Assembly (NCBI GenBank): GCA_964188305.1
Contig: OZ076896.1
Origin: Podarcis bocagei
Taxonomy: Eukaryota
Reading direction: 5' to 3' (one strand)
Length of the DNA stretch: 64,000 nucleotides
The notes below the pieces were generated by a model. It was not told where the DNA came from and did not search any database. It worked only from the letters and a program-made list of their open reading frames with translations. Positions 25,112 through 31,058 of the stretch are shown piece after piece (position 1 is the stretch's first letter; every line of letters begins with the position of its first letter). Position numbers and translations under genes: made by a program.

Positions 25112-25294
25112 CTAGTAAATTTTAAAACAAGATACATTTTTTAGAAATTCAGCACAACGCAACCATATTAGATATAAAGTTTCTCCTCAACAAGTTCATA
25201 TATTTCTCTTATCTCCCAAGATGAAATACAGTGGTACCTCGGGTTACAAACACCTCAGGTTACAAACTCTACTAACCCAGAAGTAGTACCTTGG

Positions 25295-25702
25295 TGTCAG
25301 GGAACTGCCATCAGAGCATCAGGTGGTGGAGGGACTCAGGCAGGATGAAAGAGACTCAACTGCTGAAGCAGGGACCAGCAGGGGGAGGAGTGGGTCTCTG
25401 AGGGAATGCGAGCAGGAGGGAGGGCTCAGGGAGGCTTCCAGCGAAAACAGTGGGGAGGTATCGGAGTCTCCCATAGGGAGACCCATACCTCGCAGGAAAC
25501 TGTCACGCCGTGAGTCCAGGAGACGCGTTTCCGTTAAGGAACTTCTTTGTTGGAAACGCTTCCGCAGACAGCCACTGTCGGACTCTACTAGTGACTAGAG
25601 CAGACATGTCTGAGGAGCTCCGTCACACACGGAGGTTTGTGGGGGCGCACAAACTCTGAGGGAGCACGTTTTCACGCACAAGCAGCTAATCAAACCCTCA
25701 CA
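25295..25702 (+). repeat. 5' LTR
   Basis: TGTCAGGG...CCCTCACA; direct repeat of 30357-30764. Confidence 0.97.
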
Positions 25703-25704
25703 GC

Positions 25705-25715
25705 AGTCCGACAGT
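25705..25715 (+). promoter_or_regulatory. Primer-binding site (self-priming type)
   Basis: AGTCCGACAGT, 2 nt after the 5' LTR; exact complement of ACTGTCGGACT at 25574-25584; no TGG start. Confidence 0.8.
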
Positions 25716-25747
25716 CTTTGTACGCTGCCTGTGCAAGAGAAGGCATC

Positions 25748-26761
25748 ATGAGCGAACCAACCGGAACCGGAGGAGCAGGGGCTGGAGCTGGTCCAAGCTT
25801 GGAAGATAGATACCGAGCGTTGGAGGTTCAACTGGCCCTGCAGACGGCGAGGCTGGAGGAGAGAAGGGCTCAGGATGCAGACAAGAAGGGGAGAGCCACT
25901 CAATTCCCCAGAAAGGTACCAGGATTGGTGCAGAAATTTGGGGGGGACCCCAAGGACTACCATGCTTTTAGGACAGAGATGCAATATGCCCTTAATGTGC
26001 AGTTCGATGAGTTCCCTGATGAGGAATCGCGAGTTGCTTTTGTAATTGGGCATCTTGAGAAAGGGGCTAGAGACTGGGTGCGACCCCTAATGGCAACGCA
26101 CAATGACATACTAAAGGACACAATGAAGTTCTTTCGTGCAATGGATATCATGTTTTCCAGCGATATTGAGGAAGGGGTGGTGCGCAGACAGCTAATGGCT
26201 TGTAAGCAGGGGAGTCGATCTGTCCGTGAATATTGGACTGAGTTTACCATGCTGATTCACAGACTGAGTTGGGATTTATCGGCGGCACCCGTTCAAATGC
26301 TATTTGAAGAAGGTCTTTCTTCGGGGGTGAAAGACGAGCTGGCACGGAGCCCCAGGGCGGAGTCTATGGATCAGCTGACCAAATCTGCGCTGACCATAGG
26401 AGCGCGGCAGGAGGCAAGAGCCTTGGAGAGGCGGGAAGGGAGAGGGGAACGTTGGAAGGAGTTCCGCATTCCAGACATTCCTGAGCCAGCTTTCCCGCCG
26501 GCAGAGCCGATGGAAATCGGAACAGCGCGCGCGCGCGCATTTTCAAAAACCAGCGAGGGAGCTAAGAAGGAGGGAAAGGGCCCCCGGAAATGCTATCTCT
26601 GCCAACAGCCAGGCCACTTTGCCAGAGTCTGCCCCCAGAGGAAGGAATGGCAAGGGATGGTGGGAGCTGTTGAGGGGGGAGAAGAAGGGGGAGCGGAGCA
26701 GGTAAAAGCCAACGCCTGGTTGCCACAATTGGGGCACTGCAGCCAGGCCAAAGAGCAGTGA
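25748..26761 (+). CDS. gag: Gag (capsid-like domain plus CCHC zinc knuckle)
   Basis: ATG at 25748; retrotransposon Gag features (QGSRSVREYWTEF, EPMEIG); CYLCQQPGHFARVC = CX2CX4HX4C. Confidence 0.93.
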   Translation: MSEPTGTGGAGAGAGPSLEDRYRALEVQLALQTARLEERRAQDADKKGRATQFPRKVPGLVQKFGGDPKDYHAFRTEMQYALNVQFDEFPDEESRVAFVIGHLEKGARDWVRPLMATHNDILKDTMKFFRAMDIMFSSDIEEGVVRRQLMACKQGSRSVREYWTEFTMLIHRLSWDLSAAPVQMLFEEGLSSGVKDELARSPRAESMDQLTKSALTIGARQEARALERREGRGERWKEFRIPDIPEPAFPPAEPMEIGTARARAFSKTSEGAKKEGKGPRKCYLCQQPGHFARVCPQRKEWQGMVGAVEGGEEGGAEQVKANAWLPQLGHCSQAKEQ

Positions 26762-26769
26762 AAGTGCCC
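26701..26769 (+). promoter_or_regulatory. -1 ribosomal frameshift signal (slippery heptamer plus pseudoknot)
   Basis: G_GTA_AAA, 6-nt spacer, stem 1 = 26714-26723/26739-26748, stem 2 = 26732-26738/26763-26769. Confidence 0.78.
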
Positions 26770-29700
26770 GTGCCAGAAGCTCCTCGACCTGCTCTAGTGA
26801 TTGAAGTGTCGCTAGAGCTGCAGAATGGGCACCCCCTAAAAATAAAGGCGCTATTGGACTCAGGCAGCTCCTGCAATTTTATGAGCAAGGAGTTTGTTGC
26901 TGAACACCAGATACAGACCATCCCTTTAAGCAACCCCCTGCAGGTGACCACGATTGATGGCAGGGAGTTGTTGGGAGGAGGAGTCCGCTTGCAGACTGTC
27001 CCAATGATAATGAGGGTGGCAAGGCACACAGAACTGATAGCGTTTAATGTGGCCACCCTGGGAGGCGCTCCCATTATTTTGGGAATGAGCTGGCTAGCTC
27101 TACATGATCCGCTGGTTGGCTGGCATCAAAGAGTGGTGTCCTTTGGTTCAGCACATTGCCTAGAACACTGCAAAGGGGAGAAGGGTTCAGTAGGGGCCCA
27201 AGCCACCCTAGCAGGGACTGAAGTAATGGGAAAGGTGAAGGTACCACCACAGTATGCAGATCTCAGCGACGTGTTCAGCGAGAAGGAAGCTGACCAACTA
27301 CCACCTCATAGACCCTTTGATTGTCAGATCAATTTACTCCCTGGAGCACAGCTTCCCGTGGGCAAGTTGTATGCCATGTCAGACAGGGAAATGCAGGAGT
27401 TGCGAGGGTTCATTGACAAGAACCTGAAGAGAGGCTTCATCAGAGAGTCCAAAGCAGCAGGGGGGAGCCCAGTGTTCTTTGTGGACAAAAAAAATGCGGA
27501 CAAGCCGAGACTTGTATGTGATTTTAGGCGGCTGAATGCAGTGACTGAACCGGTGGCGTTCCCTATGCCCAGAATTGATGATATTTTGACCATGGTGAGG
27601 AAGGGAAAGATTTTCACAAAGCTGGATCTAAGGGGGGCGTACAACCTGATACGCATAAGGAAAGGGGATGAATGGAAAACCACCATGTTTACCCCTTTGG
27701 GGGCGTTTGAATACCTCGTTATGCCATTTGGATTACAAGCAGGCTCCGCGTGTTTTCAATCTTTTATGAACCACGTGCTGGGCCCTTTGCTCTACAAGAA
27801 TTGCGTTGCCTTTCTAGATGATGTGTTGGTGTATTCTGAGAATGAGGAGCAACATGTGAGAGACGTCAGAGAAGTGTTGAGCAGACTGCAAGCCAACAGG
27901 CTGTGGGTCAAACTGGAGAAGTGTCGGTTCCATACCAAGGAGGTGGAATTCCTGGGGTACCGCCTGTCAGACAAGGGATTGGCCATGGATCCCGGCAAGG
28001 TACAGGCAGTGCTGGAATGGAAAACACCCAAAACCAAGAAGGATGTGCAGAGGTTCCTAGGGTTTGGAAACTTTTATCGTAAGTTCATCCGCAACTTCGC
28101 CCATCTGACGGCGCCCATCACTGACTGTCTCAGCAGTAAGAAGAAGTTTGTATGGACGGCGGAGGCGGGGCGAGCGTTTGAGGAACTGAAAAGGGCCTTC
28201 GCCTCTGAAGAACAACTTCTGCATGTGGATTTACGAAAGAAGCTAAGGGTTGAAACAGACGCATCTGACAGAGCCATAGGGGCGGTGCTTCTTCTGCAGC
28301 CGGGGAAGGAGGAGTCGGAGTGGCGTCCGTGTGCCTTCTTCTCGCGGAAGCTGAACAAATCCGAGAGGAACTACACGGTGTACGACCGAGAACTGCTTGC
28401 TATTCATGAGGCGTTCCGGAGATGGAGGCATCTGCTAGTTGGTGCACAACATAAAGTGCAAGTGTGCACGGACCATAAAAATCTAGAGTACTGGAGAACG
28501 GCGCGAGTGCTCAACCAAAGGCAGTTGAGATGGGCCCAAGAGTTCTCCAAATTTAACTTTGAGATTTGTTATGTGCCAGGCCCAGAGAATGTTAGGGCGG
28601 ACGCTCTCTCACGCAAGCCTGAATATTTGGAGGGGGAGGGAGCACCCGAAGAAACCCATATCATTCCAGAGGACCGCTGGGTGTGTGGGGCGACTTTGGT
28701 GGGGCAAAGGGAATTGGTAGAGGGTACGGTGCAGGATGCATACGCCCAGGGGAAACTCAGGGATCTCAGAGGGGAGGAAGACAAACCCGGTGGTTTTGAG
28801 GAGAGAAATGGGGCATTGTATTATAAGGGAGCGTTATATATACCTGAAGGGGAATTGAGGGAGAAAGTACTCAAGCAGCTGCACGATAGCCCCACAGCAG
28901 GGCACTTTGGGCAACACAAAACCATGTGGCTGGTTACCAGGGAATTTTGGTGGCCCAAGGTCAGGGAAGATGTGCGGGAGTATGTGAGAGGGTGTGAACA
29001 ATGCCAAAGAGCCAAGGGGGAGAGGCAGGCGCCGGCTGGTTTATTAGAACCACTGCCCACACCTGAGAGACCGTGGGAAGCAGTGGCAATAGATTTCATG
29101 ACTGATCTGCCAAGGTCTAGAGGGAAAACAGCCATCATGGTTGTAGTAGACCTGTTAACTAAAATGGCCCACTTCATAGCCTGCTCACATGCGGTTACAG
29201 CAGAAGAAACCGCCAAATTGTTTGTAGAGAATGTGTTTAGGTTGCATGGCGCCCCCTTGAGGGTGGTTTCAGACCGAGGGAAACAATTTACTTCCAGGTT
29301 CTGGAGGAAGCTCATGAGCTTACTGCATGTAGAGGTTAATTTCTCGACGGCCCGTCATCCTGAAACCAACGGGCAGGCGGAAAGAGCAAATGGGGTTCTC
29401 CAACAATATTTGAGGTGTTATGTTAATGACAGAGAGAATGATTGGGTGGAGAAGCTGGCGTTGGCAGAATTTGCCTACAACAATGCAGAGAACGTGTCCA
29501 CGGGGATGAGCCCCTTTTTGGCTAATCACGGGTGCCATCCCAGAGCCTTCCCAGGGGGGGAGGGGGAGAACTGGAGCGTTCCAGCTGCAGAACAGTTCGT
29601 GGAAGAAATGGAAGCGATCCATCGCCAGCTCCAACTCAACTTAAACAGGGCTAAGGAGGAATATAAGAGGCAAGCAGACAAAAACAGAAGGGAAGGTGAA

Positions 29701-30660
29701 AGCATCAGGGTGGGGGACCAGGTGTGGCTGTCAACCCAAGGGTTGCCATTCAAAGGAGGTTGTAAGAAATTAAGACCCAAAAGGCTGGGTCCGTTTGAAG
29801 TCATACAGCAGGTCAATCCAGTGGCTTTCAGGCTCCGGTTACCGAACCACATGAAGCTGCACCCAGTTTTTCACAGGTCGTTGCTGTCACCGTATAGAGG
29901 AGACAGTGAGGGGAGGGTCACTAGGGGACCAGCAATGGAGGAGAAGGAACACAGCTACCATGTAGCGGAGATCCTCGATTCCAGGTGGAAGGGAGATCAA
30001 GTAGAGTATTTGGTAATGTGGGAAGGGGAACCGGAGTCGGAAAACACCTGGGTTAGGGCAGAGGATGTCAATGACGAGGTTTTAATAGAGACTTTTCATC
30101 AGAGGTTCCCACGTAAACCTCAGCCTGTAGCGAGGTTCCGAAGGGAATACTTTGCCACCACCGACGAGGAAGAGGAGTTGGAGGGGTTCCCAGATTCTGA
30201 AGAGGAGGAGGATTCAGCTGGCCAGGACGACGATCGATGGAGAGAATTGTTCGAGACGTCAGAAGATGAGGAAGATTCGTTTCGGGGTTTTAGCCCTTCA
30301 CCTCCCAGGGGGGAGGAATTGGGAGGGGGTGAGGGGGGCCCTGGAGGGGAGGTGGATGTCAGGGAACTGCCATCAGAGCATCAGGTGGTGGAGGGACTCA
30401 GGCAGGATGAAAGAGACTCAACTGCTGAAGCAGGGACCAGCAGGGGGAGGAGTGGGTCTCTGAGGGAATGCGAGCAGGAGGGAGGGCTCAGGGAGGCTTC
30501 CAGCGAAAACAGTGGGGAGGTATCGGAGTCTCCCATAGGGAGACCCATACCTCGCAGGAAACTGTCACGCCGTGAGTCCAGGAGACGCGTTTCCGTTAAG
30601 GAACTTCTTTGTTGGAAACGCTTCCGCAGACAGCCACTGTCGGACTCTACTAGTGACTAG
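26758..30660 (+). CDS. pol: Pol polyprotein (PR-RT-RNase H-integrase-chromodomain), -1 frame to gag, probably entered by frameshift near 26707
   Basis: LLDSGS protease; MPFGL and FLDD RT motifs; ETDASD, DHKNL, ADALSR RNase H; HHCC, D,D35E and GPF integrase motifs; chromodomain; frame open from 26674 with no stops. Confidence 0.96.
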   Translation: MKVPVPEAPRPALVIEVSLELQNGHPLKIKALLDSGSSCNFMSKEFVAEHQIQTIPLSNPLQVTTIDGRELLGGGVRLQTVPMIMRVARHTELIAFNVATLGGAPIILGMSWLALHDPLVGWHQRVVSFGSAHCLEHCKGEKGSVGAQATLAGTEVMGKVKVPPQYADLSDVFSEKEADQLPPHRPFDCQINLLPGAQLPVGKLYAMSDREMQELRGFIDKNLKRGFIRESKAAGGSPVFFVDKKNADKPRLVCDFRRLNAVTEPVAFPMPRIDDILTMVRKGKIFTKLDLRGAYNLIRIRKGDEWKTTMFTPLGAFEYLVMPFGLQAGSACFQSFMNHVLGPLLYKNCVAFLDDVLVYSENEEQHVRDVREVLSRLQANRLWVKLEKCRFHTKEVEFLGYRLSDKGLAMDPGKVQAVLEWKTPKTKKDVQRFLGFGNFYRKFIRNFAHLTAPITDCLSSKKKFVWTAEAGRAFEELKRAFASEEQLLHVDLRKKLRVETDASDRAIGAVLLLQPGKEESEWRPCAFFSRKLNKSERNYTVYDRELLAIHEAFRRWRHLLVGAQHKVQVCTDHKNLEYWRTARVLNQRQLRWAQEFSKFNFEICYVPGPENVRADALSRKPEYLEGEGAPEETHIIPEDRWVCGATLVGQRELVEGTVQDAYAQGKLRDLRGEEDKPGGFEERNGALYYKGALYIPEGELREKVLKQLHDSPTAGHFGQHKTMWLVTREFWWPKVREDVREYVRGCEQCQRAKGERQAPAGLLEPLPTPERPWEAVAIDFMTDLPRSRGKTAIMVVVDLLTKMAHFIACSHAVTAEETAKLFVENVFRLHGAPLRVVSDRGKQFTSRFWRKLMSLLHVEVNFSTARHPETNGQAERANGVLQQYLRCYVNDRENDWVEKLALAEFAYNNAENVSTGMSPFLANHGCHPRAFPGGEGENWSVPAAEQFVEEMEAIHRQLQLNLNRAKEEYKRQADKNRREGESIRVGDQVWLSTQGLPFKGGCKKLRPKRLGPFEVIQQVNPVAFRLRLPNHMKLHPVFHRSLLSPYRGDSEGRVTRGPAMEEKEHSYHVAEILDSRWKGDQVEYLVMWEGEPESENTWVRAEDVNDEVLIETFHQRFPRKPQPVARFRREYFATTDEEEELEGFPDSEEEEDSAGQDDDRWRELFETSEDEEDSFRGFSPSPPRGEELGGGEGGPGGEVDVRELPSEHQVVEGLRQDERDSTAEAGTSRGRSGSLRECEQEGGLREASSENSGEVSESPIGRPIPRRKLSRRESRRRVSVKELLCWKRFRRQPLSDSTSD
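30343..30356 (+). promoter_or_regulatory. Polypurine tract
   Basis: GGAGGGGAGGTGGA immediately before the 3' LTR TG. Confidence 0.85.
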
Positions 30661-30764
30661 AGCAGACATGTCTGAGGAGCTCCGTCACACACGGAGGTTT
30701 GTGGGGGCGCACAAACTCTGAGGGAGCACGTTTTCACGCACAAGCAGCTAATCAAACCCTCACA
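30357..30764 (+). repeat. 3' LTR
   Basis: No differences from the 5' LTR seen on visual alignment. Confidence 0.97.
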
Positions 30765-31058
30765 CTTGGGTTAAGAATTTTGCCCTAGGATGAGAACAGA
30801 ATCGCGCGTCGGCAGCGGGAGGCCCTACTAGCTAAAGTGGTACCTCAGGTTAAGAACGGTTTCAGGTTAAGAACGGACCTCCGGAACGAATTAAGTTTGT
30901 AACCAGAGGTACCACTGTATAGTCAACCAAGTTGACTATAATAAATCAAGTTGATTGTATGTATTGTATGTATGAGAGGAGAGAGACCTTCTGAAGGGAA
31001 CACTTAACGAAGCTTTTACACCATTAAGTATGCAAATTAAATTTACTCAAATCAATTA

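What the first reader, a model, noticed from the sequence alone, without database searches (positions are those of the whole stretch)
25574..25715. tRNA-independent self-priming: PBS pairs with the element's own LTR
Seen: the sequence after the 5' LTR lacks the TGG expected for pairing with a tRNA CCA end. Instead AGTCCGACAGT (25705-25715) is the perfect 11-nt reverse complement of ACTGTCGGACT (25574-25584) inside the LTR. Known: S. pombe Tf1 primes reverse transcription with the first 11 nt of its own mRNA, and this was proposed for Tf1/sushi-group elements. Inference: transcription starts at about 25574, defining the U3/R border, and this lizard element self-primes.
Basis: partly seen in the sequence, partly recalled or inferred. 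Interest (0 to 1): 0.72.

Follow-up and report, generated by a model that had tools for sequence, protein, structure and literature searches.

The report
Self-priming lizard LTR retrotransposon
A young, complete gypsy-type jumping gene in a lizard genome very probably starts copying itself with the first 11 letters of its own RNA rather than a host tRNA; this trick is already known from yeast Tf1 and its vertebrate relatives, so it is a well-supported new example and not a new mechanism.

Summary
The window holds a complete 5,470-bp Ty3/gypsy chromodomain element (25295-30764) with identical 408-bp LTRs and a 5-bp target duplication. Two bases after the 5' LTR, AGTCCGACAGT (25705-25715) is the exact reverse complement of ACTGTCGGACT (25574-25584) inside the LTR. 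No TGG follows the LTR. A match this long arose in 16 of 20,000 shuffled LTRs.

Three diverged subfamilies recovered from public assemblies (gag 80-88% identical) each keep a perfect 11/11 complement. They do so through changes on both sides at positions 4, 7 and 10 of the 11-mer. Two distant families (pol 49% and 41% identical) have the same layout, with a canonical TATA box about 31 nt upstream of the LTR copy. This fits Tf1-type self-priming and argues against a tRNA primer.

The start site at 25574 and the RNase H cut could not be tested, because no raw RNA reads were available. The literature already describes self-priming for Tf1/sushi elements of yeast and vertebrates, so this is a new member of a known kind. 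First-stage readers noted the same idea on two other pieces of this genome (s1-349717, s1-356589).

The parts
25290..25294 (+). Target-site duplication CTTGG, left copy
   Evidence: Same 5 nt at 30765-30769 directly outside the LTRs
25295..25702 (+). 5' LTR, 408 bp, TG...CA
   Evidence: 100% identical to 30357-30764
25543..25549 (+). TATA-like position (TTCTTTG here, TTTTATG in the three related subfamilies), -31 to -25 from 25574
   Evidence: Alignment A1 and context print. This is a weak match in the window copy. Its role as a promoter element is inferred.
25574..25584 (+). Proposed self-primer: 11 nt in the LTR, proposed first 11 nt of the transcript (start of R)
   Evidence: Exact complement of 25705-25715. 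Co-varies with the PBS in relatives. CCA+1CT initiator-like context is conserved. The start site itself was not tested.
25630..25658 (+). Conserved hairpin in R-U5 (stem kept, loop free to vary) between primer and PBS
   Evidence: RNAalifold on four variants: 10 pairs, nearly invariant stem, variable loop. Also present in the single-sequence fold. Any role like the U5-IR stem-loop is inferred.
25703..25704 (+). 2-nt spacer GC between the LTR end (CA) and the PBS
   Evidence: Conserved in all family variants. This is the length expected for terminal nucleotides trimmed by integrase (inference).
25705..25715 (+). Primer-binding site, 11 nt, complementary to the element's own 25574-25584
25748..26761 (+). 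gag ORF, 337 aa (capsid-like domain, CCHC zinc knuckle)
   Evidence: Pfam Retrotrans_gag, Ty3_capsid, zf-CCHC
26758..30660 (+). pol ORF in the -1 frame relative to gag: protease, RT, RNase H, integrase, SH3_Tf2-1, chromodomain. It runs 304 nt into the 3' LTR.
   Evidence: Pfam. Closest solved relative is Ty3 Gag-Pol, 7q5b, E 3e-138. ORF list.
30343..30356 (+). Polypurine tract directly upstream of the 3' LTR
   Evidence: Read from the sequence. Function inferred.
30357..30764 (+). 3' LTR, holding the second copy of the 11-mer at 30636-30646
30765..30769 (+). Target-site duplication CTTGG, right copy

Best explanation
This is a recently inserted, structurally complete Ty3/gypsy chromodomain retrotransposon of a lacertid lizard. 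It most likely initiates reverse transcription by Tf1-type self-priming. Shown here: an 11-nt PBS lies 2 nt after the 5' LTR, it is exactly complementary to 11 nt in the LTR, and the two sites co-evolve across subfamilies. Inferred: transcription starts at or very near 25574, so the 11-mer is the 5' end of the RNA. It anneals to the PBS, in cis or on a co-packaged RNA. The element's RNase H then cuts after nt 11 (25584). The freed 3'-OH primes minus-strand strong-stop DNA across the GC spacer and R-U5 back to 25585. Also inferred, from the general retroviral scheme: plus-strand strong-stop synthesis copies the primer, so the PBS of progeny can be rewritten from the primer. That would explain why complementarity stays perfect while both sites drift at near-background rate.
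For: The 11/11 exact complement sits 2 nt after the LTR, and no TGG follows the LTR. Chance of a match this long is about 8e-4. Primer/PBS pairs in the four variants:
- window: ACTGTCGGACT / AGTCCGACAGT
- L001, L002, L005: ...GGAAT / ATTCC...
- L007: ACTTTCGGATT / AATCCGAAAGT
- L009: ACTGTCCGATT / AATCGGACAGT
All 55 cells pair. Three of the 11 pairs changed on both sides. Slid-partner controls pair at 16-38% with no both-sided change. The intervening R-U5 varies at 45 of 120 columns against 3 of 11 in each 11-mer. These relatives carry full-length gag ORFs. Independent families repeat the layout. L010 has an 11-nt complement with TATTTA at -32. L011 has a 10-nt complement 1 nt after an identical LTR pair, with TATTTAAG at -31. 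The RNA fold puts the 11-bp duplex as the closing helix of R-U5. The domain set includes SH3_Tf2-1 and a chromodomain, and relatives are named Tf2 polyprotein. The Tf1 mechanism and its extension to vertebrate Tf1/sushi elements are in PMC7175516 and PMC6317226.
Against: There is no direct RNA evidence. All runs on offer were assembled contigs, and none is on record as RNA, so the start site, the RNase H cut and expression are untested. The window copy has only a degenerate TATA-like motif at -31. No AATAAA-type signal is present in the R-U5 of this family, so the R/U5 border and 3'-end formation are unexplained. Host tRNAs were not available for a direct comparison, and the window holds no tRNA gene. 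Only four family variants were recovered. No RT phylogeny with reference Tf1 and sushi-ichi sequences was made.
Confidence: 0.85

Rival explanations
1. The 11-bp pairing is real and selected, but it serves as a long-range RNA helix, for example for packaging, dimerisation or control of gag translation. Priming would then use some other primer.
For: Covariation by itself proves pairing, not priming. The duplex closes a multi-hairpin R-U5 fold.
Against: The 3' partner sits exactly where a PBS must sit, 1-2 nt after the LTR end, in three independent families. No other candidate PBS (TGG) lies nearby. The helix length of 10-11 nt matches the Tf1 primer (PMC7175516).
Confidence: 0.07
2. The element self-primes, but the 11-mer is not the transcript's first 11 nt. 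Transcription would start further upstream in the LTR, and the primer would be a longer 5' fragment or be made by two cuts. The U3/R border would then not be at 25574.
For: The start site was not measured. The TATA-like motif of the window copy is degenerate.
Against: Relatives have TTTTATG at -31. The two distant families have canonical TATA boxes 31-32 nt upstream of their complementary sites. An initiator-like CCA+1CT is conserved at the 11-mer start. In Tf1 the primer is the first 11 bases.
Confidence: 0.12
3. A host tRNA, tRNA fragment or other cellular RNA is the primer, and the match to the LTR is incidental.
For: Host tRNAs could not be compared, and the window has no tRNA gene. Half-tRNA primers exist in some Ty1/copia lineages (PMC6317226).
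Against: No TGG follows the LTR. The PBS differs at 3 of 11 positions among close subfamilies, and every change is mirrored in the LTR. A conserved host RNA would not allow that.
Confidence: 0.03
4. The complementarity is a chance match.
For: Short inverted repeats do occur in GC-rich LTRs.
Against: 16 of 20,000 shuffles reached 11 nt. Complementarity is kept through four separate both-sided changes. Two other families repeat the layout.
Confidence: 0.01

Closest known systems
Tf1 / Tf2 of Schizosaccharomyces pombe (founding self-priming LTR retrotransposons)
   Same: The PBS next to the 5' LTR is complementary to 11 nt of the element's own R region, and there is no tRNA-type PBS. It is a Ty3/gypsy element with a chromodomain integrase and a Tf2-type SH3 domain. 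The mechanism is described in PMC7175516.
   Different: The host is a vertebrate. gag and pol are separate ORFs joined by a -1 frame change. From my own knowledge, Tf1 has a single ORF. The pol ORF overlaps U3 and the primer copy in the 3' LTR. The start site and the RNase H cut are experimentally shown for Tf1 but not tested here.
Vertebrate Tf1/sushi-group elements (sushi-ichi of pufferfish and relatives; Butler et al. 2001, cited in PMC6317226)
   Same: Vertebrate chromodomain Ty3/gypsy elements for which self-primers have been described. Fish relatives score about 41% pol identity. L011 shows the same TATA, primer, LTR end and PBS layout.
   Different: This is a lacertid-lizard family, 93% identical to Podarcis muralis proteins. 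My two paper searches found no report of self-priming in it. It lacks the AATAAA seen near the LTR 3' end of Sushi-type LTRs (PMC3601003).
Tcn1-clade chromoviruses of fungi, mosses and club-mosses (predicted self-priming)
   Same: They lack tRNA-type PBSs, and self-priming is predicted from sequence (PMC6317226; PMC7175516).
   Different: Different hosts. The relationship to this element was not examined here.
tRNA-primed Ty3/gypsy elements and retroviruses
   Same: Same overall LTR, PBS, gag-pol and PPT plan. The PBS sits at the U5 border. The closest solved structure is Ty3 Gag-Pol.
   Different: Their PBS pairs with the 3' CCA end of a host tRNA and begins with TGG. Here it pairs with the element's own LTR and co-varies with it.

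Membership tests
Tf1-type self-priming LTR retrotransposons | No tRNA-type PBS (no TGG complementary to a CCA end) after the 5' LTR | tested here: met
   The 20 nt after the LTR end at 25702 hold no TGG. The host tRNA set was not available.
Tf1-type self-priming LTR retrotransposons | A PBS adjacent to the 5' LTR is complementary to about 11 nt of the element's own LTR (R region) | tested here: met
   11/11 exact complement, 2 nt after the LTR. Chance about 8e-4.
Tf1-type self-priming LTR retrotransposons | Pairing is maintained in evolution (compensatory changes) | tested here: met
   Four variants, 100% of cells paired, 3 of 11 pairs changed on both sides, slid controls show no both-sided change.
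Tf1-type self-priming LTR retrotransposons | The complementary bases are the first bases of the mRNA (start site at the 11-mer) | not testable with these tools
   Only assembled contigs were available, none on record as RNA. Indirect support: TATA-like motif at -31 in the family, and canonical TATA at -31/-32 in L010 and L011.
Tf1-type self-priming LTR retrotransposons | RNase H cuts between nt 11 and 12 to release the primer | not testable with these tools
   This needs biochemistry. An RNase H domain is present.
Tf1-type self-priming LTR retrotransposons | Additional RNA structure between primer and PBS (a U5-IR-like stem-loop) | tested here: inconclusive
   There is a conserved hairpin at 25630-25658 with a variable loop, but little covariation because the stem hardly varies. 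The original paper was not held.
Tf1/sushi group of chromoviruses (Metaviridae) | Ty3/gypsy domain order PR-RT-RH-IN with a C-terminal chromodomain | tested here: met
   Pfam RVP_2, RVT_1, RT_RNaseH, Integrase_H2C2, rve, SH3_Tf2-1, Chromo. Ty3 Gag-Pol is the best PDB match.
Tf1/sushi group of chromoviruses (Metaviridae) | RT/IN phylogeny places the element with Tf1 and sushi-ichi | not tested
   No reference Tf1 or sushi-ichi sequences were on hand. The only support is by name: fish and fungal relatives at about 40% identity are labelled Tf2 polyprotein.
tRNA-primed LTR retrotransposons | PBS complementary to the 3' end (or a half) of a host tRNA | tested here: not met
   No TGG follows the LTR. 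The PBS varies among subfamilies and tracks the LTR. A half-tRNA match was not checked directly.

The most novel reading that the evidence does not exclude
Primer and PBS may form a self-rewriting pair. A change in the LTR 11-mer would be copied into the PBS one replication cycle later. Subfamilies would then quickly acquire private primer/PBS pairs. Those pairs could act as compatibility barriers against priming between co-packaged RNAs of different subfamilies, a built-in route to lineage splitting in a vertebrate retrotransposon. In the 3' LTR the same 11 nt also lie inside the pol ORF.
Probability: 0.2. Interest if true: 0.55.

Novelty: new member of a known kind. Interest (0 to 1): 0.3.

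Why it matters
It gives clean natural covariation evidence that Tf1-type self-priming operates in an amniote retrotransposon family. The family looks recently active: identical LTRs, open gag and pol, and many copies in several lizard data sets. It also gives annotators a precise prediction for the U3/R border. For annotation, it shows that tools which look only for tRNA-type PBSs will mis-score such elements. It does not change what is known about the mechanism.

Tried and rejected
- RNA evidence: the run search listed no run on record as RNA and no raw reads. Laying four runs gave only contigs, with no starts or ends, so nothing can be said about the start site or expression.
- More family members: the Podarcis muralis pol protein P0007 is not on record with DNA. 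The Pleurodeles locus came back without DNA. A degenerate LTR-end/PBS pattern found nothing in metagenome or viral contigs.
- L012, a distant relative in a metagenome scaffold, gave only ambiguous 9-10-nt complements and no LTR pair, so I left it out of the argument.
- L014 is a nest of several elements and was not analysed further.
- The original Levin laboratory papers and the Esnault and Levin review were not held, so I cite the mechanism through PMC7175516 and PMC6317226.
- There is no tRNA gene in the window and no Rfam family in the element.

Full report
**What is there.** The finding sits in the 5' end of a complete LTR retrotransposon at window 25295-30764 (5,470 bp).
- The LTRs (25295-25702 and 30357-30764) are 408 bp, begin TG and end CA, and are 100% identical.
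- The 5-bp duplication CTTGG flanks them.
- gag (25748-26761, 337 aa) has a retrotransposon capsid domain and a CCHC knuckle.
- pol (26758-30660, -1 frame) has protease, RT, RNase H, integrase, a Tf2-type SH3 domain and a chromodomain.
- The closest solved structure is Ty3 Gag-Pol.
- The best protein relatives are Podarcis muralis proteins (93%, 91% and 87% identical). Next comes a second Podarcis family (56%), then Anolis (45-46%), then fish and fungal proteins near 40%, several of them named Tf2 polyprotein.
- The host is therefore most likely a lacertid lizard, and the element is a chromovirus-type Ty3/gypsy element. Identical LTRs and open reading frames point to a very recent insertion.

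**The observation.** ACTGTCGGACT at 25574-25584 is the exact reverse complement of AGTCCGACAGT at 25705-25715. The only other copy in the 64-kb window is the 3' LTR copy at 30636-30646.
- The PBS starts 2 nt (GC) after the last LTR base.
- No TGG follows the LTR.
- Pairing stops at 11 bp on both sides.
- When the LTR was shuffled 20,000 times, a complement of 11 nt or more to the 20 nt after the LTR arose 16 times.
- The folded R-U5 leader uses the 11-bp duplex as its closing helix.

**The decisive test: covariation.** A gag search found three diverged subfamilies in public assemblies, at 88%, 83% and 80% identity, each with a full-length gag ORF. Their contigs include the LTR and leader, because the assemblers collapsed the two LTRs. 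In the alignment each subfamily has its own 11-mer and its own PBS, and in each the two are perfectly complementary:

| Source | LTR 11-mer | PBS |
|---|---|---|
| window | ACTGTCGGACT | AGTCCGACAGT |
| L001, L002, L005 | ACTGTCGGAAT | ATTCCGACAGT |
| L007 | ACTTTCGGATT | AATCCGAAAGT |
| L009 | ACTGTCCGATT | AATCGGACAGT |

- Counting on the alignment gives 100% of 55 cells paired and three of 11 pairs changed on both sides.
- Sliding the partner by 1-3 columns gives 16-38% paired and no both-sided change.
- The 120 nt between the two sites vary at 45 columns, and each 11-mer varies at 3 of 11. The sites are therefore not frozen; they change together.
- At least four separate paired changes are needed to explain the variants.
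- A PBS held by an invariant host tRNA could not behave like this.

**Where the RNA starts.** This could not be measured. The run search returned no run on record as RNA and only assembled contigs. Laying four runs showed that the family is abundant and diverged in several organisms, but gave no molecule ends. The indirect evidence favours 25574:
- The three related subfamilies have TTTTATG at -31 to -25. The window copy has the weaker TTCTTTG.
- The 11-mer starts in a conserved CCA+1CT context, which from my own knowledge resembles an initiator motif.
- Two unrelated families show the same plan with canonical TATA boxes.
  - In L010 (pol 49% identical) an 11-mer lies 32 nt after TATTTA. It is complementary to 11 nt that follow an ...ACA end plus a 2-nt spacer.
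  - In L011 (pol 41% identical) the LTRs are identical and 479 bp long, with TSD ACTAG. A 10-mer lies 31 nt after TATTTAAG and is complementary to the 10 nt that start 1 nt after the LTR.

**How it most likely works.** The shown parts are the pairing, its position at the U5 border, and its co-evolution. [quoted passage not shown]
- Here the cut would fall after 25584. Minus-strand strong-stop DNA would run from 25704 back to 25585.
- The GC spacer fits the two terminal nucleotides that integrases trim (inference).
- In the general retroviral scheme, plus-strand strong-stop synthesis copies the primer. A change in the LTR 11-mer could therefore be written into the PBS a cycle later. That would explain perfect pairing alongside near-background drift (inference).
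- A hairpin at 25630-25658 has a conserved stem and a freely varying loop. It may correspond to the U5-IR-like stem-loop required by Tf1, but this is not established.

**What does not fit or stays open.**
- No AATAAA-type signal lies in the R-U5 of this family, unlike L011 and the Sushi LTR model (PMC3601003). The R/U5 border and 3'-end formation are therefore unknown.
- Host tRNAs could not be compared.
- No reference-based RT tree was made.

**Comparison and novelty.** Self-primers are described for the Tf1/sushi group in yeast and vertebrates, and are predicted for the related Tcn1 clade (PMC6317226). My paper searches found no report for lizard elements. Even so, this is a new member of a known kind, not a new mechanism. 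First-stage readers noted the same idea on two other pieces of this genome. Those notes are unchecked and are not used as support.

**Verdict.** I put 0.85 on Tf1-type self-priming and about 0.65-0.7 on the start site being exactly at 25574. Interest is modest.

Noticed in passing
window 30357-30660 (and 25295-25598): The pol ORF continues through the polypurine tract and 304 nt into the 3' LTR. It ends 12 nt after the 11-mer, so the primer copy in the 3' LTR lies in coding sequence. L001 and L002 keep the same ORF end. In L007 the called ORF upstream of gag ends about 100 nt earlier, and in L009 no such ORF was called. Whether this tail is translated and functional is open.
   Followed up: partly
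window 26701-26769: gag ends at 26759-26761 and pol opens in the -1 frame with a 4-nt overlap, so a -1 frameshift is implied. The slippery site and pseudoknot proposed by another first-stage note were not examined.
   Followed up: no
window 25227-25294 and 30765-30897: The element is inserted inside a very abundant short repeat, SINE-like, with GGTACCTC...GGTTA motifs. Contig depth in these flanks is far higher than inside the element (roughly 3- to 900-fold, depending on run and flank). Many contigs end at 25227 and at 30896-30897 in all four runs.
   Followed up: partly
window 25585-25702: No AATAAA, ATTAAA or common variant is present in the R-U5 of this family (only AATCAA at 25688, and only in the window copy). 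The distant L011 has AATAAA near its LTR end.
   Followed up: partly
L012:2670-2790: A distant relative in a metagenome scaffold has TATAAATA followed about 30 nt later by AAGTGTTAA. Its 9-nt complement lies 13 nt before the gag ATG. This may be a much shorter R-U5 with the same priming logic, but no LTR pair was available.
   Followed up: no
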